From IMG/VR virus record IMGVR_UViG_3300043418_000114, positions 186,001 to 250,000 of that record: DNA of 64,000 nt, one strand, 5' to 3'. The translations under genes were made by a program, and so were the position numbers. Each line of letters opens with the position of its first letter. Position 1 is the stretch's first letter. The notes under the pieces are model-generated. The model ran no database searches and was not told the origin of the DNA. It saw only the letters and a program-made list of their open reading frames with translations. Of the stretch, positions 1,982 through 61,718 are shown piece after piece.

Positions 1982-2002
1982 GGAGCGTAAAGCAAAACAC
2001 AT

Positions 2003-3883: not shown

Positions 3884-3937
3884 TCCAGAGTTGCCCGTTT
3901 CTCCTTTATTGATAAATACAATAATAAGGATGAAAAC

Positions 3938-38307: not shown

Positions 38308-39441
38308 CTATCGTAAATTAATTTTTACGTTAGGGTCTAATGTGATGCTAGACCAATTCTTGTTGAAATTGCCCCATATATCTTTCTCATTCTTGTAATC
38401 AGAAAGCAATGATAGCAATTGTGGATTGAATCGCTCAACTATCTTACGTTGAATAAGACCTGTTGTGGAATTCAGGGTGATATCCTCTACTGACATTCTA
38501 TGAATCGTTTGAGGGATTCGTATGTCTGCGAAAGGACTAAAAGTCATGTTGTTGTCAATGTGCCAATACTGATGATCATAAAAAATTGTTGAGTATAAAA
38601 ACTTCATCAACTGTTCTTGGTCGTAGTATTCTTCCATTGAATCTTTGTACTTGGCTACAACATTGGGACGCTTCAAAAACCAATAAAGATAATCAGTTTC
38701 TTTAGCTAGTTCGTCAATGTGTTTGCCTTGATAGTTTGCCAATGCGTTGATTGCTTCGCCGTCACGGTACTGATATGTCTCTGCATAGAAGCCAGTTGCA
38801 TACCAATTTAATTCCGTAAATGCACTTGATACATCATATCCCCAGTGTTTACTGGATACAAAGTCTACCAAGTCACTATCGTACTCTCTAACTCTGCCCA
38901 AAAACTTATGTAACGTATCGTCACCTTGTTTAGGCACATATGCTGTTAGAGTATAGTCTTTTGTGTAGCTGTCTAGTACAGCCCATGTTGTTAGGGTATC
39001 CAGTCCTGCTGAATACAACACATTCATGCGTTCAATATTATTGTACTTGTAGAAGTTTCGTGTGTTTTCTAACAATATATCGCCGATGATAATCGACGAC
39101 TCTTCCAATGACAGTAGGGTATCATTGGGAATTTTAGGTTCATTGTATGTAACAATGCCGTAGCCTTCAGTGGCTAGGTTTGTTTGTTCACCATTGCGTT
39201 CATATAATGGAAAACCTCTGAGAACTGGGTGATACACTTTTTCGTCATGTATCACGCACCATTTCCCAGCTGGCTGATAGCCATCAAGTATTTCTAGTAG
39301 CGTATCTGCTAGAGTACAATCTACGCTATAACCCTTATACCAGATGTTATCTTTTTGTTTCCAGCCGCCATCTAAAAACAGGCGATCTGAAACTTTGTTC
39401 ATCGCCTGTATTGGACAATTGGATCCGATGTAGAAAAACAT
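38308..39441 (-). CDS. Asparagine-synthase-like (PP-loop) protein
   Basis: 'VLYSAGLD' PP-loop-like motif and 'SPF.D'. Confidence 0.5.
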   Translation of the reverse strand: MFFYIGSNCPIQAMNKVSDRLFLDGGWKQKDNIWYKGYSVDCTLADTLLEILDGYQPAGKWCVIHDEKVYHPVLRGFPLYERNGEQTNLATEGYGIVTYNEPKIPNDTLLSLEESSIIIGDILLENTRNFYKYNNIERMNVLYSAGLDTLTTWAVLDSYTKDYTLTAYVPKQGDDTLHKFLGRVREYDSDLVDFVSSKHWGYDVSSAFTELNWYATGFYAETYQYRDGEAINALANYQGKHIDELAKETDYLYWFLKRPNVVAKYKDSMEEYYDQEQLMKFLYSTIFYDHQYWHIDNNMTFSPFADIRIPQTIHRMSVEDITLNSTTGLIQRKIVERFNPQLLSLLSDYKNEKDIWGNFNKNWSSITLDPNVKINLR

Positions 39442-39665
39442 TATCGCTTGTTGCCGATGCGCTTTAGATAATCACGGCCGACTAGGCCCTTTTCGATTTC
39501 TTGCAATGCAGTAACAAGATGGCCTGCTTTTGTTGCTAGTTTTGGTCGATGACCACGGGATAATTCACGAGTACGTTGACTTGCGATTAGAATCAAATCA
39601 TATCGATTGCCAACTGCATTAACTGCATCTTCGCTAGTATAGCGAACTCTACTTTCTGTCGTCAT
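39441..39665 (-). CDS. rpoZ: RNA polymerase omega subunit
   Basis: 'T.EDAV..VGNRYDLILIASQR.REL..G..P.......VTALQEI..G'. Confidence 0.88.
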   Translation of the reverse strand: MTTESRVRYTSEDAVNAVGNRYDLILIASQRTRELSRGHRPKLATKAGHLVTALQEIEKGLVGRDYLKRIGNKR

Positions 39666-41118: not shown

Positions 41119-41200
41119 CTATACTGAAACACACTGACTCTCCAGTATTTCTACTTTCGCCGAGTTTGACCGCGTAGTCGTGCAATGTGTTTTAGTATAG
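41119..41200 (-). repeat. Long-stem element (family 2)
   Basis: CTATACTAAAACACATTG...CAGTGTGTTTCAGTATAG. Confidence 0.65.
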
Positions 41201-42079
41201 TGGAGCACTGAGAATACATGCTTACCGAGTAACACCTCAGACATTATTACAATCCTTGCGAGACTGCTTTCTTCTGACTTCCACTGCAACCTCTTGCGAG
41301 TATCACAGTCTGTTACCAACATCGCCGTTTTAAGTCAGGCATTAGACTTGACGCTGTATGCTATTCTACGCTTTCTATCCCGTTGACCTTTAGAGCCATT
41401 CACTACCGCTAAGTAGTTACGAAACTTCCTGCATAAACAGATTTCACCTTGCGAGTTACGTCTGACTGGATTATCTTGCGACTCCAGTATTAGATGCTTT
41501 TCACATACAACCGAGACAGACTTTGCTTTTTTAATCGATAGAAGGGATCGAACCTTCAGCCGACTGCTTGAAAATGCAGTTGATCTACCATTGATCTATA
41601 TCAACCTACTGTGATGTGCTGTCTCAGTTGCTTCATAATCTTTTGGACTACAAAATACAACACGCCACGTACCTTTTGTCTCGCGGACTACTCAGTCGTC
41701 TTTCACGATTAATGTCGGGTCTCGGCTTTCGCGTACCTCCATCAACCATTCAAACTGCATTACAACTCTTAGATGCGACTCCTCGAATCATAACACTACC
41801 CTTTCTCATACCAATTAACTGGACTGGTTTTGTCGTGAGGTCAGCACCACCTGTTACTCTCTAATGACTTGCGTTACCCTCGATATTATCTCAGGCGCTT
41901 AAGCCACTAATTCTTTCCACAACTTCCAGCGTCATTGTTATCACCACCGGTCTTATCAGTGATGAAACCCTCGCGGGTTTGAGCAGGCTTGCTTAGATGA
42001 ACTATTTCTAGCGCGGGTCTGTAGGAGACTACCGCTTTGGGCCGATCACTCGGCTTATTCTAATGAGGCTAAGCCCCCA
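41201..42079 (-). ncRNA. GOLLD-like giant structured RNA with an embedded tRNA-Glu-like domain
   Basis: About 880 nt without a credible ORF; many GCAA/GNRA-capped stems; ends GCATGTATTCTCAGTGCTCCA; tRNA-cluster context; cloverleaf at 41533-41605. Confidence 0.65.
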
Positions 42080-42083
42080 TAAA

Positions 42084-42200
42084 TTCTTATACTCGCATAC
42101 ACTTGCAATATTGAAATTGCCTACCGGAAGGATATCTCACATCCAGCTGTGTCCGCTCACATCCGTATGGCCTATACGTTTATGTATGCGAGTATAAGAA
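42084..42200 (-). repeat. Long-stem element (family 2-like)
   Basis: 17-bp perfect stem TTCTTATACTCGCATAC / GTATGCGAGTATAAGAA. Confidence 0.6.
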
Positions 42201-42204
42201 CTAC

Positions 42205-42309
42205 TTTCTTAACATTGTTGAACATACTAGTGCATTTCCAAATTATGCTACTCCTCATCAGGGATGGAATCGAACCAACATCCCTAATACATTCAACAAT
42301 GCTAAGAAA
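42205..42309 (-). ncRNA. YrlA-topology tRNA-mimic RNA
   Basis: About 25-bp stem enclosing T loop TTCGATT, a short closed acceptor hairpin, then D arm TAGCATAATTTGGAAATGC. Confidence 0.6.
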
Positions 42310-42326
42310 ATTCTTAGCAATAATTT

Positions 42327-42394
42327 TTTAAAGAACATCACTGATTTCTCAGTGTCAATACAAGTATTGTATAAGGTTTTTAATTCACTGTCAA
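42327..42394 (-). promoter_or_regulatory. sigma70 promoter with boxB-like hairpin and boxA-like element
   Basis: TTGACA-N17-TACAAT; CACTGA-GAAA-TCAGTG; TGTTCTTTAAAA. Confidence 0.7.
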
Positions 42395-42424
42395 CAACTT
42401 TTTTAAGATTGTTAACCATTTTAT

Positions 42425-42500
42425 TGGAGCGGGAGGCGGGAGTCGAACCCGTCTATTTCAGTTTGGAAGACTAACGTGTAACCACAAACACTTCACCCGC
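42425..42500 (-). tRNA. tRNA-Gly(TCC)
   Basis: Loop CTTCCAA; U73; CCA. Confidence 0.88.
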
Positions 42501-42512
42501 ATAAATAACTTT

Positions 42513-42865
42513 ATGCATATCTATGACGCTATCACAAACTCTGGATTACACATCCACTTGTCCATGAGCGCCGATAATACATTTTACATTCTAGTATACG
42601 ACATTGATAACTTCATGTTAACTATGAAATTTTTCAACAATGTAGATACTGCAATGCAATTTATCCATTCACTATGAGTAGCCCAACAGATTACGAAATC
42701 TTATATAGATTAAACACTAGTCCATATGCAGAGACTAAGAGTTGGGTACTGCCTAATACATTCAAAGCAATGTTCTCAAATGAGAACTTACCTGAATTTG
42801 TTATTGATGAACTATTAAAGAAACAGACGTTTAAATTAGACGATCAGTTTCCTCAATACAAATAA
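42513..42865 (+). other. Two small coupled CDS (42513-42677, 42674-42865) antisense to the tRNA array
   Basis: ATAAATA upstream; ATGA overlap. Confidence 0.5.
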
Positions 42866-42867
42866 TC

Positions 42868-42943
42868 TGGCATCCCGGGAGGGATTTGAACCCCCAACTT
42901 ACGGTTTTGGAGACCGTTGCTCTGCCAATTGAACTACCGAGAT
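42868..42943 (-). tRNA. tRNA-Trp(CCA)
   Basis: Loop CTCCAAA; G73; CCA. Confidence 0.9.
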
Positions 42944-42949
42944 ATATAA

Positions 42950-43010
42950 AACAGGATGCTTATTTTTCAATTAAAAGTTGAATTATAAGATGTTGCTGGA
43001 CGCATCCTAA
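42950..43010 (-). ncRNA. CAGCA-scaffold RNA copy 5, with a bare Lys(TTT) anticodon stem-loop
   Basis: TAGGATGC-GTC-CAGCA...TTCAA-CTTTTAA-TTGAA...GCATCCTG. Confidence 0.85.
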
Positions 43011-43014
43011 AACT

Positions 43015-43104
43015 TGGCGGAAACGGTGAGATTCGAACTCACGGACCCTTTGAAAGATCGCCGGTTTTCAAGACCGGAGCCATAGACCACTCGACCACGT
43101 TTCC
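43015..43104 (-). tRNA. tRNA-Ser(TGA)
   Basis: Loop CTTGAAA; long V arm; G73; CCA. Confidence 0.92.
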
Positions 43105-43117
43105 ATTAAAATATTTA

Positions 43118-43202
43118 TACCATATGTAAACACACTAGCGTTTTTCACTAAACTACAACTTGACTGGACTTGACCAGTGACTCTATTGTGCTTGCATATG
43201 GT
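43118..43202 (-). repeat. Long-stem element (family 2)
   Basis: ACCATATGCAAGCACAATAG...CTAGTGTGTTTACATATGGT. Confidence 0.65.
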
Positions 43203-43315
43203 GACAGTTTAGTCCGATAACTGCCAAGAGTTGTGGTGATCCGGCACACCTTTTATGTATAAGTTGACTACAAGAGGCTTATACACTAGGGCCTTCACGT
43301 TGCCCTATTTTTTAA

Positions 43316-43442
43316 TACCATATAGAAACACACTGTCGTTTCTCTTTCCAGTCTAGACAACCTCGCTTACGAAGCACGATTATATCACAGGATTACGCAT
43401 CCTGCTCGTCACTGTACTCAAGCAATGTGTTTTTATATGGTA
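43316..43442 (-). repeat. Long-stem element (family 2)
   Basis: TACCATATAAAAACACATTG...CAGTGTGTTTCTATATGGTA; overlaps the CCA of tRNA-Lys. Confidence 0.65.
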
Positions 43443-43512
43443 GGGGCACAGGGAATCGAACCCTGATAGACCGGTTAAAAGCCGGATATTCTAGCCGTTG
43501 AATTATACCCCC
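43438..43512 (-). tRNA. tRNA-Lys(TTT)
   Basis: Loop CTTTTAA; CCA. Confidence 0.9.
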
Positions 43513-43515
43513 ATA

Positions 43516-43590
43516 TGGTCCCAGTGCTGAGATTCGAACTCAGTTCTCTCGGCTTAAGAGGCCGGACTTCACCTTCAAAGTTTCTCTGGG
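43516..43590 (-). tRNA. tRNA-Lys(CTT)
   Basis: Loop CTCTTAA; CCA; imperfect acceptor stem. Confidence 0.75.
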
Positions 43591-43689
43591 ATGGATCGTA
43601 AGAAATTTTCTTTTACGTGCCATCTGAGACCATACGGGGGTCAAAGATGACACTATCGTTTACCTGAACGTTTCATGTCATTTACCTTT

Positions 43690-44046
43690 TTAAGATTTAA
43701 GTGCTTTTAAAATATTATCCCAAGATTCAGTTGGATTATGACCTTGATCTAGCAAGGCAACATAAGTCTTAACTGCATCTTCTGGAATCTTGAAATAGAT
43801 GTTTGCGTAGGTGCAGTCGAATGAATCATCTTCATCACGAACGTACCATGGATGACTTGACATTTCATCAAATACATCTTCATAGTCTTCACGATTGCCA
43901 CCACCATTACGTGTGTGAACAACAATGTGACCATCTTCTACATAAACATCACGAAAGCGACCGAAGTCACCTTTTGTTTTATCTAACAGACTCAGGAGTT
44001 GATCCGAGTTAGGGTTAGTGCCAAACATCATGTTATACAAACTCAT
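43690..44046 (-). CDS. Hypothetical phage protein
   Basis: AAGGAG SD; 'GRFRD...HTRNGGGNREDY...DD.FDCTYA'. Confidence 0.65.
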   Translation of the reverse strand: MSLYNMMFGTNPNSDQLLSLLDKTKGDFGRFRDVYVEDGHIVVHTRNGGGNREDYEDVFDEMSSHPWYVRDEDDSFDCTYANIYFKIPEDAVKTYVALLDQGHNPTESWDNILKALKS

Positions 44047-44144
44047 TTCATTCTCCTTTGTTAATTTGTGGAAGTTCCGATAGCACCCATCGTCACTTAC
44101 AACCGTTGAGTAGCCTTGCATCAAAACAGTGCTACTATTTGCTC

Positions 44145-44219
44145 TGGAGGACAGGATAGGAATCAAACCTACCTAGAACGGATTTGCAATCCGCCACATA
44201 ATCGCTCTGTCACCTGTCC
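44145..44219 (-). tRNA. tRNA-Cys(GCA)
   Basis: Loop TTGCAAA; U73; CCA. Confidence 0.82.
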
Positions 44220-44228
44220 ATATTTTGT

Positions 44229-44316
44229 TGGCGGAGCATGTAGGAATCGAACCTACTCACCTCTTTCGAAATGATGGATTAGCAATCCATTGCCTTAACC
44301 GGTCGGCCAATGCTCC
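44229..44316 (-). tRNA. tRNA-Ser(GCT)
   Basis: Loop TTGCTAA; long V arm; CCA. Confidence 0.9.
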
Positions 44317-44331
44317 GTAAAATATCTGATT

Positions 44332-44500
44332 AAAAATCATAAAATAGTGTATTCAGCTGGCAGACTGCAACAAGATACTATCCTCTAATATATTAGTATC
44401 ACAGTGATATTAAGTTCCGGACCCTAATATCACCAAAGTCTGGCAAATAAGATATATAAATTCAAAGTTTATTAAATGAATACACTAATTTATGATTTTT
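44332..44500 (-). repeat. Long inverted-repeat-bounded element
   Basis: AAAAATCATAAATTAGTGTATTCA...TGAATACACTATTTTATGATTTTT. Confidence 0.6.
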
Positions 44501-44576
44501 GGTGGGCCCAACAGGACTCGAACCTGTGGCCAAGGAATTATGAGTTCCCTGCTCTAACCAACTGAGCTATAGGCCC
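44500..44576 (-). tRNA. tRNA(CAT), Ile2-like or Met
   Basis: GGGCCTA acceptor; loop CTCATAA; CCA. Confidence 0.85.
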
Positions 44577-44586
44577 ATAATCTAAA

Positions 44587-44766
44587 ACCATATTATAATA
44601 CACTCCCAATGCATGTCAAGCACTGTAACTTCATGGTACATCTTGAACCACAGTTTCGAACCTGTGAAATGTAGCACTATCTAGTATCAACTCTTTCGAA
44701 TTCAAAACATACTAGACCCGGCAAGCTGGGGCCTCTATATATGACAAGAGTATACTATAATATGGT
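44587..44766 (-). repeat. Long-stem element (family 2)
   Basis: ACCATATTATAGTATACTC...GAGTGTATTATAATATGGT; overlaps the CCA of tRNA-Leu. Confidence 0.6.
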
Positions 44767-44849
44767 GCGGGTGGCCGGAATCGAACCGGCACGGTGTCTC
44801 CACCGACGGATTTTAAGTCCGTTACGTCTACCTATTTCATCACACCCGC
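44763..44849 (-). tRNA. tRNA-Leu(TAA)
   Basis: Loop CTTAAAA; long V arm; CCA. Confidence 0.92.
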
Positions 44850-44856
44850 ATATTAC

Positions 44857-44933
44857 TGGCGCCTCGTAGGGGACTCGAACCCCTGGCCTCTTGCGTGACA
44901 GGCAAGCGATCTAACCAACTGAGCTAACGAAGC
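44857..44933 (-). tRNA. tRNA-Asp(GTC)
   Basis: Loop CTGTCAC; G73; CCA. Confidence 0.9.
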
Positions 44934-44938
44934 GTAAA

Positions 44939-45090
44939 TGGTGGGCTATCGCGGATTCAAACCACGCAACAACTCTATGTTGTAGAGTTAGGATTTCCAA
45001 TCACTCTAAAGCCTATAAATTCATCACCGTTGACGTTTTACCATTGAAAGACACGGTGCCATCTGTCTCAGTCGCATTACCTATCACCCC
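44939..45090 (-). ncRNA. About 150-nt RNA with a tRNA-like 3' end
   Basis: T-like arm CGTGG-TTTGAAT-CCGCG, then ATAGCCC-A-CCA; probable 5' partner GGGTGAT. Confidence 0.45.
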
Positions 45091-45139
45091 ATGCTCGGAT
45101 TCATAGATAGGCATTCTACTGATAATTCAATGTTTATCT

Positions 45140-45226
45140 TGGTGGATGCGGCTGGAGTTGAACCAGCAGTGCCTTTCGGGCGGCGGGTTTACAGCCCGCT
45201 GGGGTTACCAATTTTCCTACACATCC
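45140..45226 (-). tRNA. tRNA-Tyr(GTA)
   Basis: Loop CTGTAAA; V arm; CCA. Confidence 0.9.
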
Positions 45227-45227
45227 A

Positions 45228-45656
45228 TTATTTGTTTTTGCCACACCAAGTGTCAGTCTGTGAATGACAATTGGGACAGAGTAATCTTAAGTTTTTAAAC
45301 TTGTGATTGTGATTATCGCCGTCTATGTGATCTAAATGTAGAGAAATTTCTTTTCCCATCCATTCTTCTAATCCACACGACGAGCATTTGTTATCTAATA
45401 TTTTTTCTTTTAACAAACGCTTTTTCAGTTTTAGTGTTTGATATGTAGGATGCAATCCTTCTAGAATTTCATTCAACTCTATCTTCTTTGCACCACCACC
45501 TATCTTAAAATCTAAACCTAATCTTTTTGCTCTACGCCAAACTGTAACATCTGGCACATTAAAATAATGTGCTAACTTGCTCAAGACTGGCGTAATGTTA
45601 TACTGTTCTATCAATTCAGTATCTGTAAACTTTTCTGTACTATGTTTTTGTTTCAT
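45228..45656 (-). CDS. HNH endonuclease
   Basis: CxxC...LHLDHIDGD..N....NLRLLCPNCH. Confidence 0.88.
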   Translation of the reverse strand: MKQKHSTEKFTDTELIEQYNITPVLSKLAHYFNVPDVTVWRRAKRLGLDFKIGGGAKKIELNEILEGLHPTYQTLKLKKRLLKEKILDNKCSSCGLEEWMGKEISLHLDHIDGDNHNHKFKNLRLLCPNCHSQTDTWCGKNK

Positions 45657-45699
45657 ACAGTATTTATGAAAAGTTAGATATGAAATCTAAAAATAAACT

Positions 45700-45776
45700 T
45701 GGTGCCCCCAGCGGGACTCGAACCCGCAGAATCTTGATTTTGAGTCAAGCACGTATACCAATTCCATCACAAGGGC
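45700..45776 (-). tRNA. tRNA-Leu(CAA), short variable loop
   Basis: Loop CTCAAAA; CCA. Confidence 0.85.
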
Positions 45777-45904
45777 AAAAAGAAACATACTAGCGATCTA
45801 CTGTTGTTGTGATTGAACACAGGACTTAGTATAAGTCGTCCCAACTCCGCATCTTTTTAACACAAGTCCTGCGGTTGCTTGTGAGCTAATATATTTCAAA
45901 AACT

Positions 45905-45980
45905 TGGTACTCCGTATGGGAATCGAACCCATCTTACCAACGTGAAAGGCTGGTGTCCTAAACCGATAGACGAACGGAGC
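45905..45980 (-). tRNA. tRNA-Glu(TTC)
   Basis: Loop CTTTCAC; CCA. Confidence 0.9.
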
Positions 45981-45988
45981 ATAGTTAT

Positions 45989-46091
45989 TCACTATATGTA
46001 AACACAAAAGCAATACTAACCGGGCGGTCGATATCGGCGTTAGCCAAGTCACTTACCCAGACTTTCAAACTAATGTGCTTACATATAGTGA
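45989..46091 (-). repeat. Long-stem element (family 2)
   Basis: TCACTATATGTAAGCACA...TGTGTTTACATATAGTGA. Confidence 0.65.
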
Positions 46092-46123
46092 CTGCTTCAC
46101 AGCAGTGTATATGTTGGTTGTTT

Positions 46124-46192
46124 TTTTAAAGAACAGTGCTGATTTCTCAGCGTCAATACATGTATTGTATAACATGTTTGAATCATTGTCAA
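46124..46192 (-). promoter_or_regulatory. sigma70 promoter with boxB-like and boxA-like element
   Basis: TTGACA-N17-TACAAT; GCTGA-GAAA-TCAGC; TGTTCTTTAAAA. Confidence 0.7.
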
Positions 46193-46331
46193 ACTATTTT
46201 TAAGTATTTTAGATGGATTCGAACCATCGTTTCACTGGCGATTCCCACCATACAGTTACTATGACTTCACTGTGTGGGCCCTTGCGTCCTAAGCCCCTAG
46301 ACGATAAGACACTTAGAAATAGTCTGACAAA
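46185..46331 (-). ncRNA. tRNA-like RNA with extended acceptor stem and expanded anticodon domain
   Basis: About 25-bp terminal stem, D arm, T arm GATGG-TTCGAAT-CCATC; no CCA. Confidence 0.55.
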
Positions 46332-46400
46332 TTGTTAAAGAACAGTGATTGATTTCTCAATCGATACACGTATTGTATGCGAGTTTTTATTTAGTGTCAA
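46332..46400 (-). promoter_or_regulatory. sigma70 promoter with boxB-like and boxA-like element
   Basis: TTGACA-N17-TACAAT; GATTGA-GAAA-TCAATC; TGTTCTTTAACAA. Confidence 0.72.
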
Positions 46401-47310: not shown

Positions 47311-47871
47311 CTACGAAAGCAAGATTCTAGAATGCTTTGGCACACCTGCCATCAAGTATTCCATTTGGTCTGCAAGAATTGTTCGTTGTTGCAGAATCAT
47401 GTTTTCATAGTGGTTAGGTTCATAAGGAACATAAAGTAGTTCCATACGTGCTTCTTTCAAAGACTTATGACCCTTCTTAGAGTTACATTCCTTACATGCA
47501 GTAACTACGTTCATCCAAGTGTTGTCGCCGCCATGGTACCGAGGTACAATGTGGTCACGGCTTAGATTGTGATAGTTAGGGAAATGTCCACCACAGTATG
47601 CACAAACATACCGGTCACGACCAAACAATGTCTTGTTAGTCAATGCAACATGTGCGTGACGATGTGGGTTATAACCATGACCCTTGATAGCAATAATAGA
47701 AGGAGATTCTAGGTAGCTTAGTGATCCGTCACGTTGTACGCCACCACGATACTTCGCAACAATTTCACCCATAGACCATGCTACGGAGTCAGTTGCGTGA
47801 TATGCAATTGCGTCATCGTTTGAGATCCATTGCCGGGGAACTCCTGAAATATCTAGTGCTAGAACAGCCAT
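47311..47871 (-). CDS. HNH endonuclease (McrA-like)
   Basis: RD..VCAYCG...DHIVP...GG..TW.NVVTACKECN. Confidence 0.88.
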   Translation of the reverse strand: MAVLALDISGVPRQWISNDDAIAYHATDSVAWSMGEIVAKYRGGVQRDGSLSYLESPSIIAIKGHGYNPHRHAHVALTNKTLFGRDRYVCAYCGGHFPNYHNLSRDHIVPRYHGGDNTWMNVVTACKECNSKKGHKSLKEARMELLYVPYEPNHYENMILQQRTILADQMEYLMAGVPKHSRILLS

Positions 47872-47991: not shown

Positions 47992-48032
47992 ATGTTAATG
48001 ATTATATGACAAACACCATTATTTGTCAAACT

Positions 48033-55342: not shown

Positions 55343-55378
55343 AAAAAACCTCTGGGTTTTTAATCCAGAGGTTTCATA
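55343..55378 (-). terminator. Intrinsic terminator of the putative attenuator
   Basis: AAACCTCTGG-ATTAAAAAC-CCAGAGGTTT followed by TTTG. Confidence 0.8.
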
Positions 55379-55648: not shown

Positions 55649-55775
55649 AGTATAACTTGTTTTCGATTAGTTGTCAACAACTTTTTTCGTTAACTTGTCC
55701 AAAACTTCAAAATTCTTTTTTGCTCGATTTCTCAAGCAATGTGTGTAGTATATATCTGTTTTGAGTTGTTGTCAA
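55649..55775 (-). promoter_or_regulatory. Tandem sigma70 promoters heading the tRNA array
   Basis: TTGACA-N17-TATACT at 55747-55775 and 55649-55677. Confidence 0.7.
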
Positions 55776-55791
55776 ACTTTTTTGGACATCT

Positions 55792-56820
55792 TCACAACAA
55801 CCATCGTTGATTCTTCATTGTCCACTCTACAACATCACGAAGTTTATCTTGAAATGTGTACTTTGGTTTCCAACCCAACGATGCCAGATACTCTCCTGAC
55901 AAACTGTAGCGAAAATCATGACCAGGTCGTTGACTATCATTTCCAGTGATTTGATATTGTAGCGTCTTGTTCATCACTGTAGCAATCATTTTGGCAACTG
56001 CTAGATTACTAAATTCCTCATTTGCTGTGATGTTGAATTTAGGACAGGTGATGCCTTCTGTGTTGGATGGCAATGAAAACTGCTTGTGTGGCAGATTCAT
56101 AATGAACAATGTGGCTAGAGCCACGTCTTCTACATAGATCCAATGACGTAGTCCACTCACTGTGCCAGTACTATCGCCATGAATTGTAACAACTTCATCG
56201 TTCGATAACTTATTCATCACTAAACCAATGAACTTTTCTGGATTCTGTCTCTCGCCGAACGTGTTCATAACGTGTAGGCAGTATATTGGCATGCCATACG
56301 TATTCTCATATGCTACGCACAGTTCTTCTGCCGCGGCCTTACTTGCACTATATGGACTACGACTGTTATATCTGTCGTATTCGTTGAAATTTACACCAGC
56401 TGGAGCACTTCCAAAAATCTCATCCGTCCCAAAATAGATGAACTTTTCTAGATTAGGAAGATGATGCCTTGCATATTCCAATAGGTTACATGTGCCTACC
56501 ACGTTGTCTTGAATGAATTGAACTGGATTTTGTATGCTTCTGTCAACGTGACTACCCGCGGCTAGGTGAATAATATAGTCAACGTTGCCTAGTTGTTTGG
56601 CTAGCTGAGGATTAATTTCTGCACGAAGATCATGGTAGATTACTCTAAGATTATGATTTACTGGATCTAACTCATCGCGTATTTCGACTAATCTATTCAG
56701 ATTGCCAGAAAAATCCAGTCTATCCAGACTAGTCACCTGGTAGCCTCTCGACAATAGTTGTTTTATTAGATGATGACCAATGAATCCTGCTCCACCTGTC
56801 ACTAGTACATTTTTACCCAT
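55792..56820 (-). CDS. NDP-sugar 4,6-dehydratase (RmlB/RfbB-like)
   Basis: GGAGFIG, HLAAGSHVDRSI, TDE, YSASK, RPGHD.RY. Confidence 0.9.
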   Translation of the reverse strand: MGKNVLVTGGAGFIGHHLIKQLLSRGYQVTSLDRLDFSGNLNRLVEIRDELDPVNHNLRVIYHDLRAEINPQLAKQLGNVDYIIHLAAGSHVDRSIQNPVQFIQDNVVGTCNLLEYARHHLPNLEKFIYFGTDEIFGSAPAGVNFNEYDRYNSRSPYSASKAAAEELCVAYENTYGMPIYCLHVMNTFGERQNPEKFIGLVMNKLSNDEVVTIHGDSTGTVSGLRHWIYVEDVALATLFIMNLPHKQFSLPSNTEGITCPKFNITANEEFSNLAVAKMIATVMNKTLQYQITGNDSQRPGHDFRYSLSGEYLASLGWKPKYTFQDKLRDVVEWTMKNQRWLL

Positions 56821-56861
56821 CCAGTATTTATAGACAAGGTTCCTTCAGAATAAATATCAAC

Positions 56862-57764
56862 ATGGACATACTGACTATTACATGCGACCGCGACTTCGAT
56901 ATCATGGAGTCTCACGCCAAAAGCATTCAACGTTTTTTGGCACCATGTAAGCATTGGGTTTTCGTAAATCAGTCAAAACGCTCACGCCAAGACTGGATGG
57001 AAATGCTAGAGCCATATTACACAAGGCATGAACTAGAAATTGTCTTCACCGATGACATAGAATCATTTGGTGACTTGAATGGTTGGATCGTTCAACAGAT
57101 ATGGAAGATACGTGCAGTAGATTGGATCAAAAAGGATTACGTTGTTTTTGATTCTAAAAACATATTTGTGCGTGACACTGACGTTGGCACATGGACTCAT
57201 GAAGGACCTGGTGTGTTTGGATACTTACCCGACACTGAGCAGAAGCCAGATGATCCTGACTTTGATTTAACTATCAACTACATTCTGTCTGCCAGAGATT
57301 GCTATGTAAAGTACTATAATTTACCAGCAATTAAAAAGACTATGAACATTATCACGCCATTCGTAGTGCGTGAAAAAGTAATGTCTGAGTTGTCAGCTAT
57401 GATCAAAAAGAATAACGTGTTTGTAGACGTACCAATCGACGACAAGGTTATATGGCATGGTGACTTTTTGCTATACAGTATGGTAGCAGAAAAATATGGA
57501 CTACTAGACACTGAACCTGACTTCCATCTTCCAGGCGATGTTACTAGTAAATCTGTATTCTATCATCATTCAGAATGGGAACAAGATGCATACAAGAGTG
57601 GGTTTGATAGATTACGCAACAATGAAAACTATGCGTGTTTGAGTCTACATCATACCTGGTTAGCGAATGCTTCAATGAATGAGCGTGTGGAAATGGCAGA
57701 GTTCTTAGAGCAATTGGATGTGCTACCAGAACGATTAAAAAAACAAATATTGAGAATAAAATGA
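56862..57764 (+). CDS. Glycosyltransferase-like protein (DUF6492-like)
   Basis: 'GW..QQ.WK...Y.V.DSKN.F'. Confidence 0.55.
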   Translation: MDILTITCDRDFDIMESHAKSIQRFLAPCKHWVFVNQSKRSRQDWMEMLEPYYTRHELEIVFTDDIESFGDLNGWIVQQIWKIRAVDWIKKDYVVFDSKNIFVRDTDVGTWTHEGPGVFGYLPDTEQKPDDPDFDLTINYILSARDCYVKYYNLPAIKKTMNIITPFVVREKVMSELSAMIKKNNVFVDVPIDDKVIWHGDFLLYSMVAEKYGLLDTEPDFHLPGDVTSKSVFYHHSEWEQDAYKSGFDRLRNNENYACLSLHHTWLANASMNERVEMAEFLEQLDVLPERLKKQILRIK

Positions 57765-58537
57765 GACATGAACAAACTAAATTAGACAATCATATTCTTT
57801 TTGCAATTCAGTTACTGAGTTATGCCTCCATTCCATTGATGTTCATGTATGCTACTATTGGACAATGGATTATTGCCAGTATCATGTGTTTCTTGTTATA
57901 TCACGTTGGTGTTGCAGTTACATTCCATCGTTTGTTAACTCATAATTCGTTCAGCACAGGTCCAATCACTAAAGTGGTGATGACAATCTTAGGCACATTA
58001 GCTACTAATGGCAGTTCATTGTACTGGGTTGCACTGCACACAACACATCACAAGTATTCAGATAGTGATAAAGACGTTCACAGTCCACGCTTTGGCTTCT
58101 GGAAGACTTGGTTCATGCCTATGTATCCACATAGCCCAGTTGACTCTACTAAGCTAGCTATCCGTTTAGCTAAAGAGCCATTGCAATTGTTCTTACACAA
58201 GTACTATTGGTTCGTTATTGCCGCATATGTTCTAATGTTGTATGTCATTAGTCCATTCGCTATCGTATATGCTTACTTGTTCCCTGTAATGTTCTCATGG
58301 GCAATGTCAGCAGGCATCGTCAACACACTATGCCATGTTCGTGGATATCGCAATCACGAGACTAAAGACAATTCAACAAACATTCGTTGGTTCTCTTGGA
58401 TCACAAACGGTGAAAGCTATCATAACAATCATCACGCTAGACCAAGCAGTGCTAATTTTGGTAGCGATACCGAGTACGACCCAGGCTACTCGTTTATCAA
58501 GTTGTTAGCAAAGTTGAAACTGGCAACCTTAAAATGA
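57761..58537 (+). CDS. Delta-9-type membrane fatty acid desaturase
   Basis: His boxes HRLLTH, HTTHH and HNNHH; TM segments. Confidence 0.92.
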   Translation: MRHEQTKLDNHILFAIQLLSYASIPLMFMYATIGQWIIASIMCFLLYHVGVAVTFHRLLTHNSFSTGPITKVVMTILGTLATNGSSLYWVALHTTHHKYSDSDKDVHSPRFGFWKTWFMPMYPHSPVDSTKLAIRLAKEPLQLFLHKYYWFVIAAYVLMLYVISPFAIVYAYLFPVMFSWAMSAGIVNTLCHVRGYRNHETKDNSTNIRWFSWITNGESYHNNHHARPSSANFGSDTEYDPGYSFIKLLAKLKLATLK

Positions 58538-58851
58538 TAATTGGCAAACCTAAAGGCAAAGACCACTATACTTGTTCCTTGAGTGATAAGTATTATGAGA
58601 ATCAATGTAAGAATCCACCAGATTATTACAGTTTGTTTGACTTCCATCAAGTGCCAGATAGCTATACCTTCGTTCCTGACATAAAGAACTATGATAAATT
58701 AGAGAAAGTATGTTATCTATTTCATCACAGGCTAGTTCAGTATTATATTGATCACAATTTAGATCCTGATACCCCGTGGTGGTGGTATGATGACAAAGAG
58801 TTACATGCATTAGCAGATAGGCTAGCACAAAGAATAAAGGACACACTATGA
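58534..58851 (+). CDS. Hypothetical protein
   Basis: Coupled ORF in operon. Confidence 0.55.
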   Translation: MIIGKPKGKDHYTCSLSDKYYENQCKNPPDYYSLFDFHQVPDSYTFVPDIKNYDKLEKVCYLFHHRLVQYYIDHNLDPDTPWWWYDDKELHALADRLAQRIKDTL

Positions 58852-59672
58852 GTACTAAACGAATTTCACACAAAAACACGCCAATGGTCATGCGTATTCC
58901 ATTGCCAGCATCACTAGCACAATTGCAAAAAGAAACACTAGATTTGATTGCTAAACCAAAAGAAGAACGCCGTAGAGTTGACAATGATTCAACATTCGCC
59001 GCACTTGACGCAGGCGAAGAAGGCAAGTACTCAGTCTATTCGAATGATGGCATCGATATGCAAGGCACGACTGGTGAAAAGTTTGAGTACAACGTTGCAT
59101 CGTTCTTTGAAATGAATGACAAAGCCAAGCAATGGGTAGCTGACAATGGCGGCCATCGTCGTGTTATCAGTCCACTAAATCGCTATCGTGGCTACATGAA
59201 TCCTTGGGTCAGTGAGTACTGGGATCCAGGACTAGACGAGCGTGTGTTTGACAAGCCAACTGAGTTGAACGTTGGTATCTTTAAAGAACTAAACGATTGG
59301 TTCAGTAACAAAGGCTATAGTGTTCGTCGTAGTGCTTTAGTCAGAGTTATGCCGCACCAATTCTTGAGTCCCCACGTTGACACTGGTCCTGATTTTATCG
59401 TTCGATTCCAAATCCCAGTTATTCACAATGACAAAGCGGTAATGGGTTTCAGAAAGTCTAAGACTGATCCATGGACAGTATTCAACTTCGAACCAGGTTA
59501 CATCTATGCTGTTAACTCAGGACTAGAACATTTTGCACGTAACGATGGCGACGATGACCGAGTTCAATTCCGTATCTGTGTTGAAGAATACAATGTATTA
59601 GAAGAACTAGGTTTCGAAGAATGGAATCAAGCCATGACTTGGGAAGATTGGGAAACACCCAAGTATGACTGA
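58848..59672 (+). CDS. 2OG-Fe(II) oxygenase (Asp/Asn beta-hydroxylase-like)
   Basis: 'PHVD...RFQIP...N.GLEH.A.N.G..DR'. Confidence 0.7.
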   Translation: MSTKRISHKNTPMVMRIPLPASLAQLQKETLDLIAKPKEERRRVDNDSTFAALDAGEEGKYSVYSNDGIDMQGTTGEKFEYNVASFFEMNDKAKQWVADNGGHRRVISPLNRYRGYMNPWVSEYWDPGLDERVFDKPTELNVGIFKELNDWFSNKGYSVRRSALVRVMPHQFLSPHVDTGPDFIVRFQIPVIHNDKAVMGFRKSKTDPWTVFNFEPGYIYAVNSGLEHFARNDGDDDRVQFRICVEEYNVLEELGFEEWNQAMTWEDWETPKYD

Positions 59673-60303
59673 TTGCTATCAAAGTCATGGTAGCGTTGAC
59701 GAACAAATTGTACTTGAGTTGCACAAATATCTAGACAGTATTTTTCCTCAAGAGATTCGTAATAGTTATCCATTGTCTGAGAATGTGTATTACACATTCC
59801 ACATGAAATACTTGTTTGACAAAAGCGTACCATTGGACATGGACGCATTGTCGTGGTATGGCGATGGTGAACGCACAGTTGACTTGATATATGATATGCA
59901 TCCCTTGAAGATTTACAAGGTCATTGAATCAGTTAGACGAGGGGTAATTGATATCATCGCTGTGGTAGATGATGCGCCTGGTAATGAGACCTTCAAAGAA
60001 TTCATCGGGGCCATGGAAGAAAAAATGGGTCGCAAAGTCCTGAAGGTTGCATTCAGTGTGTGTGGCGAAGGCCATAGAATTAAAATACACAAAGACTTTT
60101 CTGTTAAATACGACAACAAACTTCACTTAGTTATTAAGAACGGTGGAGTTAGTTCGCTTGTATGGTACGACGACAATTTCAAAGAACTTGCTAGATGTAA
60201 TGGGCAAAGTGGTGAATTGTTCTATTTTGAGGGTGACAAATACTTTCACCGTTTTGATAGACCAAAGAGCGAACGCATACATCTAATTATGTGCTTTGAA
60301 TGA
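59665..60303 (+). CDS. Putative 2OG-Fe(II) oxygenase
   Basis: 'IHKD...LHL...FH...RIHLI'. Confidence 0.55.
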   Translation: MTDCYQSHGSVDEQIVLELHKYLDSIFPQEIRNSYPLSENVYYTFHMKYLFDKSVPLDMDALSWYGDGERTVDLIYDMHPLKIYKVIESVRRGVIDIIAVVDDAPGNETFKEFIGAMEEKMGRKVLKVAFSVCGEGHRIKIHKDFSVKYDNKLHLVIKNGGVSSLVWYDDNFKELARCNGQSGELFYFEGDKYFHRFDRPKSERIHLIMCFE

Positions 60304-61718
60304 AACAGGTTGACTTTCTAATAATTGGCGCAGGCCTTGCTGGAATTGGTGCGGCAGTTCACTTCCAAAAACAATACCCAAACAAAACTTTTGCTATCGT
60401 AGAGAAACGTGGTAGTATTGGTGGCACATGGGATGTGTTCAAGTACCCAGGTGTTCGTTCAGATAGCGACATGTTTACACTGGGTTACAGTTTCAAACCG
60501 TGGACTGGTAGTTACTATGCCACAGGACAAGAGATTAACAACTACATCAAAGAAACTGCCCAAGAATACAACATTACACAACACATCCATTTCAACACTA
60601 CAGCTAGTGGCTTAGAATGGCAAGACAATCAATGGACTCTATATACTAACAACGATATGTTCGTTGCCAAATTCGTATTGTTTGCTACCGGTTACATCAA
60701 CCACGAACGTTCACACTTCCCATTCATCAAGAACCACAATAGTTTTAAAGGCAAAATCATTCATACTCAGTACTGGGATAGTGACATAGACTATACAGAC
60801 AAGAAAATAGTCGTGATTGGCAGTGGGGCTACTGCATACACATTAGTGCCAGAACTTGCAAAGACAGCAAAACACGTGACTATGATACAGCGTAGTCCTA
60901 GCTATGTACGCAGTGAAGAACGTAACCCTGAATGGTTAAAAGACATTCGTAAAGAACTATCAGACCCACAAGAGATTCATGACAAGGTTAGATTGTACAG
61001 CACTCATATACAGCACAATCAATTTCACAATAGCAGACAAAGACCTGAAGTAATGAAACGGTTGCTTATTAACGATGTTAAGAAACAACTGGATCCAACT
61101 GTTGATATTAAACACTTCACTCCAAACTACATGCCATGGGACCAGCGTATCTGCAAGATTATTGACAATGATTTCATTCAGACTGTCAATAGTGGCACAG
61201 TTTCAATCGAGACTGACACGATTGAATCGTTTACGGTGAACACCGTTGTATTATCATCTGGCAAAGAAGTTGAAGCTGACATTATTGTTATGGCAACTGG
61301 ATTCAAGACTCGCATGATGGGAGATATCTCTATCAAAGTCGATGACGTTGACAAAGATTATACCAAACTAAAAGCATACAAAGGAACAATGATTGAAGAC
61401 TTGCCTAACTTAGGCTATATATTTGGGTATGCCAGCATGTCATGGACGTTGAAGTTAGAACTAGCACTGTCATTCTATTCACGTGTATTTGATTACATGG
61501 ATAAAAACAACTATTCAGTGTTTGTACCATTTGATGAAAACACAGTTGAGTCTGGCACAGGCTTTATTGATTTGAGTGCAAACTTCTATACACGCAGTGA
61601 AGATAAATTCCCTAGACAAGGTGTTGAGTTACCTTGGCAAAACACAAACAATATCGTAGTCGATAAGACTATGTTATTAGAAGACCCAATAGATGATGGA
61701 GTATTGAAATTCAAATGA
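60300..61718 (+). CDS. Flavin monooxygenase (Baeyer-Villiger/EthA-like)
   Basis: GAGLAG, GGTWD.FKYPG.RSD, FKGKIIHTQYW, GSGATA, ATG. Confidence 0.92.
   Translation: MKQVDFLIIGAGLAGIGAAVHFQKQYPNKTFAIVEKRGSIGGTWDVFKYPGVRSDSDMFTLGYSFKPWTGSYYATGQEINNYIKETAQEYNITQHIHFNTTASGLEWQDNQWTLYTNNDMFVAKFVLFATGYINHERSHFPFIKNHNSFKGKIIHTQYWDSDIDYTDKKIVVIGSGATAYTLVPELAKTAKHVTMIQRSPSYVRSEERNPEWLKDIRKELSDPQEIHDKVRLYSTHIQHNQFHNSRQRPEVMKRLLINDVKKQLDPTVDIKHFTPNYMPWDQRICKIIDNDFIQTVNSGTVSIETDTIESFTVNTVVLSSGKEVEADIIVMATGFKTRMMGDISIKVDDVDKDYTKLKAYKGTMIEDLPNLGYIFGYASMSWTLKLELALSFYSRVFDYMDKNNYSVFVPFDENTVESGTGFIDLSANFYTRSEDKFPRQGVELPWQNTNNIVVDKTMLLEDPIDDGVLKFK

What the first reader, a model, noticed from the sequence alone, without database searches (positions are those of the whole stretch)
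42327..46400. rrn-like boxB-boxA antitermination leaders on three internal promoters of the RNA array
Promoters at 42366-42394, 46164-46192 and 46372-46400 are each followed by a GAAA-capped hairpin with covarying stems, then TGTTCTTTAA(A/C)A. This is 1-2 mismatches from the rrn boxA TGCTCTTTAACA and in the rrn order. A similar hairpin follows the 55747 promoter. One of these leaders lies upstream of the GOLLD-like RNA. Inference: the phage borrows host NusB/NusE/SuhB antitermination to transcribe long untranslated RNA despite Rho.
Basis: partly seen in the sequence, partly recalled or inferred. Interest (0 to 1): 0.7.

Follow-up and report, generated by a model that had tools for sequence, protein, structure and literature searches.

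The report
rRNA-style leaders heading phage tRNA arrays
Three promoters inside a giant freshwater phage's tRNA/GOLLD RNA cluster are each followed by a small hairpin and a "boxA" sequence matching the signal that bacterial ribosomal-RNA operons use to make RNA polymerase fast and termination-resistant, and the same module heads tRNA arrays in more than a hundred other uncultured phage contigs.

Summary
On the minus strand there are three copies of one module: TTGACA-N17-TACAAT, a GAAA-capped hairpin, then TGTTCTTTAA(A/C)A. A covariance model finds exactly these three copies in the 364-kb jumbo-phage genome.

- **BoxA match.** The core GTTCTTTAA[AC]A fits the published functional consensus GYTCTTTAANA perfectly. 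It equals the rrn-leader boxA of Pasteurella, and of Burkholderia and Ralstonia over the 11-nt core.
- **Leader similarity.** Module 3 is 26/29 identical to the enterobacterial rrn leader, from 3 nt before boxA into the spacer towards boxC. The hairpin shares CTGAGAA(A) with Salmonella and Burkholderia boxB.
- **Spread.** The module occurs in more than 100 IMG/VR contigs, nearly always after a sigma70 promoter and 8-22 nt before a tRNA. The hairpin stem covaries. The hairpin is optional, whereas boxA or a close variant is always present.
- **Bacteria.** No bacterial species genome carries the exact hairpin plus boxA combination.
- **Phage genes.** The phage encodes no NusB, NusG or S10, but it does encode an RNA polymerase omega homologue at the end of the array.

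NusB/NusE recruitment and Rho resistance remain inferred. No binding, start-site or read-through data exist, and the array spacers are C-poor, so they are not classic Rho targets. I rate this a new member of a known kind. No prior description turned up in my literature searches.

The parts
42366..42394 (-). Module 1 sigma70-type promoter (TTGACA-N17-TACAAT)
42339..42354 (-). Module 1 boxB-like hairpin CACUGA-GAAA-UCAGUG
   Evidence: -7.6 kcal/mol; stem covariation in the family
42326..42337 (-). Module 1 boxA TGTTCTTTAAAA (core GTTCTTTAAAA fits GYTCTTTAANA)
   Evidence: same 11-nt core as the Burkholderia rrn leader
46164..46192 (-). Module 2 promoter
46138..46151 (-). Module 2 boxB-like hairpin GCUGA-GAAA-UCAGC; with the preceding C it shares CGCTGAGAAA with Salmonella rrn boxB
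46124..46135 (-). Module 2 boxA TGTTCTTTAAAA
46372..46400 (-). Module 3 promoter
46347..46362 (-). Module 3 boxB-like hairpin GAUUGA-GAAA-UCAAUC (the commonest form in IMG/VR)
46333..46344 (-). Module 3 boxA TGTTCTTTAACA, 12/12 identical to Pasteurella rrn boxA
46308..46332 (-). Module 3 post-boxA spacer and GU-rich boxC-like stretch (ATTTGTCAGAC...AAGTGT), alignable with enterobacterial and Burkholderia rrn leaders
55720..55739 (-). Fourth GAAA-capped hairpin after the promoter at 55747-55775; no boxA follows, and it leads to a second promoter and a small ORF
41205..41668 (-). GOLLD RNA (conserved 3' domain); cargo of the module 1 unit
   Evidence: 203.5 bits; RNA abundance over 41200-42000
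45905..45980 (-). tRNA-Glu, first tRNA of the module 2 unit
   Evidence: tRNA-Glu is the commonest first cargo in IMG/VR modules
39441..39665 (-). RNA polymerase omega (RpoZ) homologue, first ORF after the last tRNA of the module 1 unit

Best explanation
Each module is a compact copy of the promoter-proximal leader of a proteobacterial rRNA operon. It sits in front of stretches of phage stable-RNA genes: tRNAs, GOLLD and other structured RNAs.

Proposed mechanism, with the status of each step:
1. Host sigma70 RNA polymerase starts at TTGACA-N17-TACAAT. This is inferred from consensus only.
2. The first ~35 nt of the transcript carry a GNRA hairpin (boxB-like, dispensable) and a largely single-stranded boxA, GUUCUUUAA(A/C)A. 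This is shown by sequence and fold.
3. BoxA is bound by host NusB-NusE(S10). Together with NusA, NusG and SuhB this converts the polymerase into the rrn-type processive complex: fast, pause-resistant, Rho-resistant and chaperoning RNA folding. This is inferred from homology to experimentally defined boxA elements.
4. That complex transcribes several kilobases of largely untranslated RNA. Inferred.

The element is a phage-lineage module and not a recent copy of one host's leader. It is widespread in uncultured, apparently freshwater, phages. The likely hosts are Proteobacteria whose rrn boxA reads GTTCTTTAA, which is the Burkholderiales or Pasteurellales type and not the Acinetobacter or Enterobacterales type.
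For: - Perfect fit of all three copies to GYTCTTTAANA, the consensus derived from functional E. coli boxA elements (PMC5725501).
- Identity to real rrn-leader boxA: Pasteurella TGTTCTTTAACA, Burkholderia CGTTCTTTAAAA, Ralstonia AGTTCTTTAACA.
- BLAST of module 3 against two collections lands on enterobacterial rrn leaders, 26/29 from 3 nt before boxA into the boxA-boxC spacer.
- The hairpin shares CTGAGAA(A) with Salmonella and Burkholderia boxB and sits in the same order and at a similar distance from the promoter.
- 107 IMG/VR loci carry hairpin plus boxA. Of 99 with enough flank, 87 have a consensus promoter and 66 have a tRNA starting 8-22 nt downstream.
- The stem covaries: 97.7% of cells paired, 28 cells changed on both sides, 0/500 shuffles reach this.
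- Sampling anchored on the hairpin alone gave 34 hits that passed the promoter test. Two of these are chance. Of the 32 real modules, 25 have an exact boxA and 7 a close variant. Of 70 hits without a promoter, none has boxA.
- Sampling anchored on boxA alone: 10 of 33 modules have no hairpin at all and 5 have a different one. From textbook knowledge, boxA suffices in E. coli rrn and boxB is dispensable, which matches.
- BoxA is predicted largely unpaired.
- The one hairpin in this genome that lacks boxA leads to a translated ORF.
- No phage NusB, NusG or S10 gene was found.
Against: - There are no functional data. NusB/NusE binding could not be modelled (one search gave no verdict).
- Transcription start sites are unmapped, because the metatranscriptome data were assembled contigs only.
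- The array spacers are C-poor with G>C, so a strong need for anti-Rho protection is not evident.
- Other strong promoters in the same array (44592-44619, 48001-48029) run straight into tRNAs without boxA. BoxA is therefore not required for every unit.
- In most phage modules the tRNA begins 8-22 nt after boxA, so RNase P cleavage would soon sever boxA from the nascent RNA. Whether the complex persists is unknown.
- Five cultured jumbo relatives show no promoter-linked boxA.
- The host is unidentified, so a match to its own rrn leader is untested.
Confidence: 0.65

Rival explanations
1. The module is a 5' leader for RNA stability and processing. The 5'-terminal hairpin would protect the primary transcript from 5'-end-dependent decay. 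The A/U-rich single strand after it would serve as an RNase E or RNase P leader for the first tRNA. On this view the resemblance to boxA is incidental.
For: The hairpin begins only about 4-6 nt after the predicted start site. The tRNA starts 8-22 nt after the motif. The leader is A/U-rich. A hairpin without boxA exists at 55720-55739.
Against: An incidental resemblance does not explain an exact fit to an 11-nt functional consensus, held across modules that have lost the hairpin. It also does not explain the extended match of module 3 to rrn leaders beyond boxA. Ten modules have no hairpin, so 5' protection is not the constant feature.
Confidence: 0.12
2. The module is a Nus-factor decoy or regulator. 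Abundant short boxA leaders, cut off by RNase P, would titrate NusB/NusE away from host rrn operons or would tune phage transcription. They would not serve antitermination in cis.
For: The sequence evidence is the same as for boxA. The leader is released early because the tRNA follows within 8-22 nt. The promoters are strong, with three copies in this genome.
Against: There are no data. The module always sits at the head of long stable-RNA units and is never free-standing. A cis role is the established one for rrn elements and, from my own knowledge, for CRISPR-array boxA elements.
Confidence: 0.07
3. The module is a DNA-level regulatory site. The conserved sequence around +1 to +35, including the 14-bp palindrome CAATACATGTATTG over the -10 hexamer and start site in this phage's modules, would be an operator for a phage or host protein that times expression of the array.
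For: The palindrome overlaps the -10 hexamer and +1 in the window's modules and in L025, L037, L082 and L086. A second conserved inverted repeat, TGTTGTA-N4-TACAACA, lies upstream of -35 in many modules.
Against: The palindromes differ between phage groups while boxA stays fixed. The hairpin stem covaries as an RNA helix would. Operators may well coexist with boxA, but they do not explain boxA itself.
Confidence: 0.08
4. The module is a promoter-proximal attenuator. The hairpin followed by TGTTCTTT would act as a weak intrinsic terminator that limits transcription until some factor overrides it.
For: The consensus terminator scan flags two of the hairpins.
Against: The stems have only 5-6 bp and -6 to -7.6 kcal/mol. 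The T run is interrupted and 2 nt away from the stem. Many modules lack the hairpin.
Confidence: 0.03

Closest known systems
E. coli/Salmonella rrn P2 leader (boxB-boxA-boxC), the loading site of the rrn antitermination complex (NusA, NusB, NusE, NusG, SuhB, S4)
   Same: A sigma70 promoter is followed by a hairpin carrying CUGAGAAA and then a single-stranded boxA. Module 3 also has the spacer and a GU-rich stretch. The order and distances are similar. BoxA differs by 1-2 nt, within the functional consensus.
   Different: The hairpin is a short GNRA tetraloop hairpin, whereas the rrn leader has a longer stem-loop. BoxC is absent from modules 1 and 2. The cargo is tRNAs, GOLLD and other phage RNAs, not rRNA. 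No second boxA re-loading site occurs inside the unit. The element is phage-borne, and the exact combination is absent from 185,579 bacterial species genomes.
BoxA elements upstream of CRISPR arrays (Stringer et al., eLife 2020; cited from my own knowledge, since the paper is not held in the library and is seen only as a reference in 13 held papers)
   Same: A boxA is placed at the head of a long, untranslated, repetitive RNA array so that Nus factors prevent premature Rho termination. The logic is the same as proposed here.
   Different: Those are chromosomal and experimentally shown. Here the array is a phage tRNA/ncRNA array, nothing is tested, and the spacers are not C-rich.
Lambda nutL/nutR sites (N-dependent antitermination)
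   Same: A phage uses boxA plus a GNRA-type hairpin and host Nus factors.
   Different: The order is reversed: lambda has boxA then boxB. Lambda boxA is degenerate and needs N bound to boxB. Here boxA is of full rrn strength, the hairpin is optional, and no N-like factor has been identified.
suhB and other mRNA boxA elements (Baniulyte et al. 2017, PMC5725501)
   Same: They share the consensus GYTCTTTAANA outside rrn operons.
   Different: Those lie in 5' UTRs of protein genes and repress translation or serve autoregulation. Here the motif precedes untranslated RNA.

Membership tests
rrn-type boxA (NusB/NusE-dependent) antitermination leader | BoxA sequence matching the functional consensus (GYTCTTTAANA; E. 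coli TGCTCTTTAACA) | tested here: met
   All three copies fit exactly. They are identical to the Pasteurella rrn boxA over 12 nt and to the Burkholderia and Ralstonia rrn boxA over the 11-nt core.
rrn-type boxA (NusB/NusE-dependent) antitermination leader | BoxA lies in the transcribed leader just downstream of a promoter and is single-stranded in the RNA | tested here: met
   A consensus promoter ends 28-29 nt upstream of boxA. Folds leave boxA unpaired in modules 1 and 2; in module 3 the minimum-energy fold adds a weak 3-4-bp helix touching boxA. This is in silico only; the start site is unmapped.
rrn-type boxA (NusB/NusE-dependent) antitermination leader | Order boxB hairpin, then boxA, then boxC | tested here: inconclusive
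   The boxB-then-boxA order is met in all three, and the stem covaries. A boxC-like GU-rich stretch is alignable only for module 3 and for many IMG/VR modules (AAGTGT). Modules 1 and 2 have none.
rrn-type boxA (NusB/NusE-dependent) antitermination leader | NusB-NusE heterodimer binds the RNA | not testable with these tools
   The complex-prediction job was not folded and gave no verdict.
rrn-type boxA (NusB/NusE-dependent) antitermination leader | BoxA-dependent and Nus-dependent read-through of Rho-dependent terminators, or faster elongation | not testable with these tools
   This needs reporter or infection experiments. The metatranscriptome contigs give no 5' or 3' ends.
rrn-type boxA (NusB/NusE-dependent) antitermination leader | Heads a long untranslated, structured RNA operon | tested here: met
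   Downstream lie tRNAs, GOLLD and structured spacers. In IMG/VR, 66 of 99 modules are followed by a tRNA within 22 nt.
Lambda-type nut site | BoxA upstream of boxB, and a phage N-like protein that binds the boxB loop | tested here: not met
   The order is boxB then boxA. The hairpin is absent in 10 of 33 boxA-anchored modules. An N-like protein was not searched for, because such proteins are too short and divergent.
Intrinsic terminator or attenuator | G+C-rich stem followed immediately by an uninterrupted U run | tested here: not met
   The stems have 5-6 bp and -6 to -7.6 kcal/mol, and the U run is interrupted and offset.

The most novel reading that the evidence does not exclude
A large, mostly uncultured group of phages drives its tRNA/GOLLD/ncRNA arrays as 'mini rRNA operons'. 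They would use rrn-like promoters plus boxA to load the host's rrn antitermination and chaperone complex. In the jumbo-phage subgroup a phage-encoded RNA polymerase omega subunit is co-transcribed with the array. That subunit might re-tune the polymerase, for example its ppGpp sensitivity, so that stable-RNA synthesis continues while the host shuts its own rRNA synthesis down. The invariant UGAGAAAUCA hairpin could in addition be the handle for an as yet unknown phage factor.
Probability: 0.3. Interest if true: 0.8.

Novelty: new member of a known kind. Interest (0 to 1): 0.6.

Why it matters
- It would extend rrn-type (N-independent) Nus antitermination to phage genomes, and to tRNA arrays and giant ornate RNAs such as GOLLD. 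It would explain how phages obtain high, uninterrupted output from kilobases of untranslated DNA.
- It gives a simple, searchable signature (sigma70 promoter, optional UGAGAAAUCA hairpin, GTTCTTTAA[AC]A) that marks the starts and orientation of transcription units in phage RNA arrays.
- BoxA variants might serve as a host-clade indicator. Variants seen include GTTCTTTAA, GCTCTTTAA, GCTCATTAA and GTTCATTAA.
- It supplies a natural promoter-leader context for expressing GOLLD and neighbouring RNAs in vivo.
- It links these leaders to a phage-encoded omega subunit, which suggests a coordinated take-over of the host's stable-RNA transcription programme.

Tried and rejected
- **Host identification failed.**
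  - 'of' needs a genome handle.
  - The handles obtained from the chance bacterial hits were not Proteobacteria.
  - The dTDP-glucose dehydratase homologues are again phage or metagenome contigs.
  - The one NCBI MAG among them is not held.
- **Workaround for rrn leaders.** I took rrn leaders from rrn-bearing records in the plasmid and phage collections. This gives only a coarse taxon sample.
- **Complex prediction.** NusB, S10 and the boxA RNA were submitted to complex prediction. The job was not folded and gave no verdict. It counts neither for nor against binding.
- **Cultured phages.** BLAST of two modules found nothing but promoter-level similarity. A Proteus phage hit precedes protein genes.
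- **Cultured relatives.** GYTCTTTAANA in five cultured jumbo relatives (PA5oct, GAP32, CBB, fHe-Yen9-04, Vibrio 2.275.O) is at chance level, and none of the loci returned (30 of 39 sites) has a promoter upstream.
- **False leads.**
  - The Pseudoalteromonas plasmid hit is not an rrn leader.
  - TGTTCTTTGAAA at 25347-25358 has no promoter or hairpin upstream, scores only E about 5 with the model, and is unrelated.
- **Literature.** A search for the motif string gave only unrelated papers.
- **Metatranscriptomes.** The contigs could not resolve start sites.

Full report
**Setting.** The window is bases 186001-250000 of a 364,247-bp IMG/VR virus record with direct terminal repeats and 41% G+C. 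Its large terminase is about 50% identical to those of the T4-superfamily jumbo phages PA5oct, Phosso and Atu_ph07, and 43-44% identical to GAP32 and CBB, all of which infect Proteobacteria. Between about 39.7 and 54.9 kb the minus strand carries 45 tRNA genes and a GOLLD RNA at 41205-41668 (203.5 bits). Only 23% of that 15-kb stretch is tRNA. The rest is spacers, a few small ORFs and two HNH endonuclease genes. Public runs that hold this DNA are freshwater, lake and wetland metagenomes.

**The observation.** Read on the minus strand, the three sites are copies of one module. Each has TTGACA-N17-TACAAT, about 11-13 nt, a 5-6-bp stem capped by GAAA whose inner part reads TGA-GAAA-TCA, 2 nt, and then TGTTCTTTAA(A/C)A. 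The outer stem pairs differ in a compensatory way: CAC/GTG, GC/GC and GAT/ATC.

- The promoter pattern occurs 5 times in the window against 0.07 expected.
- The exact 12-mer occurs only at these three places.
- A covariance model built from the family finds exactly three full copies in the whole genome, at E 7e-11 to 3e-8, with the next hit at E>1.
- In RNA folds the hairpins form (-6.1 to -7.6 kcal/mol) and boxA stays largely single-stranded.

The fourth hairpin (55720-55739) is real, but no boxA follows it. A second promoter follows, then a 57-codon ORF (my reading of the sequence) and a strong terminator. So the one hairpin without boxA heads a translated unit.

**Is it rrn-like?** Baniulyte et al. 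derived GYTCTTTAANA as the functional boxA consensus for gamma-proteobacteria, from the E. coli rrn and suhB elements and from mutational data (PMC5725501). All three phage copies fit it perfectly. BLAST of module 3 against the phage and plasmid collections lands on the rrn leaders of Salmonella, E. coli, Klebsiella and others. The match is 26/29, from 3 nt before boxA into the spacer that leads to boxC.

I read real leaders from records that carry rrn operons:

| Organism | Leader around boxA |
|---|---|
| Salmonella | cgCTGAGAAAaagcg…gcacTGCTCTTTAACAatttatcagacaatctgtgtggg |
| Pasteurella | TGTTCTTTAACAatctaacagacaatctgtgtggg (boxA identical to module 3) |
| Burkholderia | CTGAGAAgg…CGTTCTTTAAAAattaacagccgatAAGTGTggg (core identical to modules 1 and 2) |
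| Ralstonia | AGTTCTTTAACA |
| Acinetobacter | GATCATTAAGA (different) |

The phage hairpin therefore shares CTGAGAA(A) with the boxB region of two distant proteobacterial leaders. BoxA is of the Burkholderiales or Pasteurellales type. Module 3 also retains the ATTTGTCAGAC spacer and an AAGTGT stretch at the place of boxC. The promoter-hairpin-boxA order and spacing resemble rrn P2.

**Spread.** A scan of IMG/VR for TGAGAAATCA-N3-8-TGTTCTTTAA returned 107 loci. My rough estimate of the chance expectation is about one. Of 99 matches with enough flank, 87 have a consensus promoter just upstream. In 66 a tRNA starts 8-22 nt after the motif. Among the 64 of those that also have a promoter, the tRNA is Glu in 44, Gln in 15, Leu in 4 and Asp in 1.

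Eighteen of these loci were scanned with Rfam. All are tRNA arrays, and two contain GOLLD. In L037 a variant module lies about 510 nt upstream of GOLLD, as in the window.

The same pattern in one genome for each of 185,579 bacterial and archaeal species gave 13 hits. None has a promoter or a stem around it, so these are chance. The module is therefore a phage element and not a recent copy of any sequenced host leader.

On 55 distinct modules the three outer stem pairs covary. The helix is paired in 97.7% of cells, 28 cells are changed on both sides, and no shuffle of 500 reaches this. Slid controls collapse. The inner three pairs were fixed by the search pattern and say nothing.

**Which part is constant?** Two scans with different anchors remove the ascertainment bias.

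- *Anchored on boxA plus AAGTGT.* Of 33 distinct modules, 18 have the UGAGAAAUCA hairpin, 5 have another hairpin, and 10 have none. In those 10, boxA starts about 8-11 nt after the -10 hexamer.
- *Anchored on the commonest hairpin string alone.* Of 104 distinct hits, 34 passed the promoter test, and 2 of those are chance. Of the 32 real modules, 25 carry an exact GYTCTTTAANA within 25 nt and 7 carry near variants (TGTTCTTTTAAAA, TGCTCTTTAAC, CGCTCATTAACA, TTGCTCCTTAACAA, TTGTTCATTAAAA, or boxA after a second hairpin). Of 70 hits without a promoter, none has boxA.

Diverged copies found by the model keep GTTCTTTAA but vary the two bases before it: CG, AG or TG. These are the same positions at which the rrn leaders differ. 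So boxA is the selected core and the hairpin is an accessory. This matches E. coli rrn, where boxA suffices and boxB is dispensable (textbook knowledge).

**Mechanism.** The best-supported reading has four steps.
1. Host sigma70 polymerase starts at these promoters.
2. The nascent boxA recruits host NusB-NusE.
3. With NusA, NusG and SuhB, the rrn-type processive complex forms.
4. That complex then transcribes kilobases of mostly untranslated RNA.

The transcription units look like this:

- *Module 1.* It runs through a sub-threshold Y-RNA-like element, GOLLD and seven tRNAs into an omega-like ORF. That is about 2.7 kb before the first start codon.
- *Modules 3 and 2.* They are tandem, 208 nt apart. 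They lead through a very stable 115-nt hairpin RNA, tRNA-Glu, tRNA-Leu, an HNH gene and more tRNAs.

The phage has no NusB, NusG or S10 gene, so the factors would be the host's. Only the sequence and context are shown. Binding, start sites and read-through are inferred.

**Points against the mechanism, or unresolved.**
- The spacers are C-poor (13-24% C, G≥C in all but one) and so are not classic rut sites.
- Two other strong promoters in the array lack boxA.
- RNase P would cut most leaders off within about 20 nt of boxA.
- Cultured relatives lack promoter-linked boxA.

Faster, pause-free elongation, or chaperoning of tRNA and GOLLD folding, may matter as much as Rho resistance.

**RNA evidence.** Four freshwater metatranscriptomes hold parts of this stretch. 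X3 holds 80% of the sampled words and X16, X17 and X19 hold about 10% each. In X3 the depth is 1,458-4,047 over 41201-42000, against about 30-100 in the flanking 42001-42800. GOLLD is therefore a very abundant stable RNA of about 800-900 nt. Its 5' part extends beyond the Rfam match, consistent with a variable 5' domain (PMC12286853). The module 1 leader itself does not accumulate. The data are assembled contigs without strand or ends and may include DNA, so they neither confirm nor refute the promoters.

**Comparison and novelty.** The closest known systems are:
- the rrn P2 leader;
- boxA elements that protect CRISPR arrays from Rho (Stringer et al. 2020, from my own knowledge; the paper is not held);
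- lambda nut sites, which have the reverse order and depend on N;
- mRNA boxA elements such as suhB.

Literature searches combining boxA with phage tRNA genes, tRNA arrays or clusters, jumbo phages or GOLLD found no description of this arrangement. I file it as a new member of a known kind: an rrn-type boxA leader in a new, phage-borne context, with function still to be shown.

**Host.** The host is unresolved. The sigma70 consensus promoters, the E. coli-like omega homologue, the proteobacterial jumbo-phage relatives and the GTTCTTTAA-type boxA point to a freshwater proteobacterium. I suspect Burkholderiales. The boxA does not match Acinetobacter (GATCATTAAGA) or Enterobacterales (GCTCTTTAA).

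Noticed in passing
window 39441-39665 (-): A 74-aa homologue of RNA polymerase omega (RpoZ). Support: Pfam RNA_pol_Rpb6 at E 2e-10, TIGR00690 at 41 bits (cut-off 23.6), and PDB omega chains at E 4e-10. It starts 30 nt after the last tRNA of the array with no promoter in between, so it is probably co-transcribed with the module 1 unit. It has a 7-residue N-terminal extension before the conserved R-x-T motif. In E. coli, from my own knowledge, the omega N-terminus forms part of ppGpp site 1. Homologues (62-77% identity) sit in 8 related IMG/VR tRNA-array loci; in L037 the gene directly follows a tRNA. A literature search found no paper on phage-encoded omega.
   Followed up: partly
window 42202-42309 (-): A sub-threshold match to the Y RNA-like family YrlA (33.5 bits against a gathering score of 69; E 7e-6 in a 251-nt search). 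It has tRNA-like T and D arms inside an outer stem and begins about 17 nt after the module 1 boxA. No TROVE/Ro60 gene was found in the phage.
   Followed up: partly
window 41200-42000 (-): GOLLD is very abundant in four freshwater metatranscriptomes. In X3 the depth is 1,458-4,047 over 41201-42000 against about 30-100 in the flanking 42001-42800. The abundant region extends about 330 nt upstream of the Rfam match, which is probably the variable 5' domain. A tRNA-like element (41532-41606, odd 'tttc' anticodon call) is embedded in it.
   Followed up: partly
window 45990-46105 (-): Between the module 2 boxA and tRNA-Glu lies a very stable structured RNA with a long irregular hairpin closed by a 17-bp stem. 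The 143-nt fold has -53.2 kcal/mol and z = -6.5. The 46001-46200 bin has higher depth in the X3 metatranscriptome than its neighbours (249 against about 30-55).
   Followed up: partly
window 46200-46300 (-): By eye, the segment between modules 3 and 2 begins like the tRNA-Glu genes that follow this module in other phages (TCGTCTAGGGGCTTAGGAC) and ends with a T-arm (GGTTCGAATCC). It has extra sequence in the middle. ARAGORN and Rfam do not call it. It may be a disrupted or intron-bearing tRNA.
   Followed up: no
window 46164-46180, 42366-42382, 46372-46388 (-), and L025, L037, L082, L086: A 14-bp palindrome (CAATACATGTATTG, perfect in module 2) spans the -10 hexamer and the predicted start site in this phage's subgroup of modules. 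Other subgroups have different short inverted repeats at the same place. It may be an operator.
   Followed up: no
IMG/VR loci, e.g. L007, L023, L064, L075 (about -45 to -65 of the module promoter): A conserved inverted repeat, TGTTGTA-N4-TACAACA, lies just upstream of the -35 hexamer in many modules. It is absent from the window's copies, which have an A-tract instead.
   Followed up: no
window 55649-55775 (-) and 55346-55374: Tandem consensus promoters about 100 nt apart (second hexamers end at 55747 and 55649). The first is followed by the boxA-less GAAA hairpin. Then come a 57-codon ORF and a strong bidirectional-looking terminator.
   Followed up: no
window 45228-45656 (-) and 47311-47871 (-): Two HNH endonuclease ORFs lie inside the tRNA array. 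The second is a clear match (HNH_5 at E 4e-16). The first is borderline (HNH at 20.8 bits against a cut-off of 21.4).
   Followed up: no
window 55792-63561: A sugar-modification gene cluster lies next to the array. It includes a dTDP-glucose 4,6-dehydratase and a flavin-monooxygenase-like (FMO-like) protein. The dehydratase's closest homologues (65-79% identity) are again on phage-like metagenome contigs, next to methyltransferase and putative glycosyltransferase genes.
   Followed up: partly
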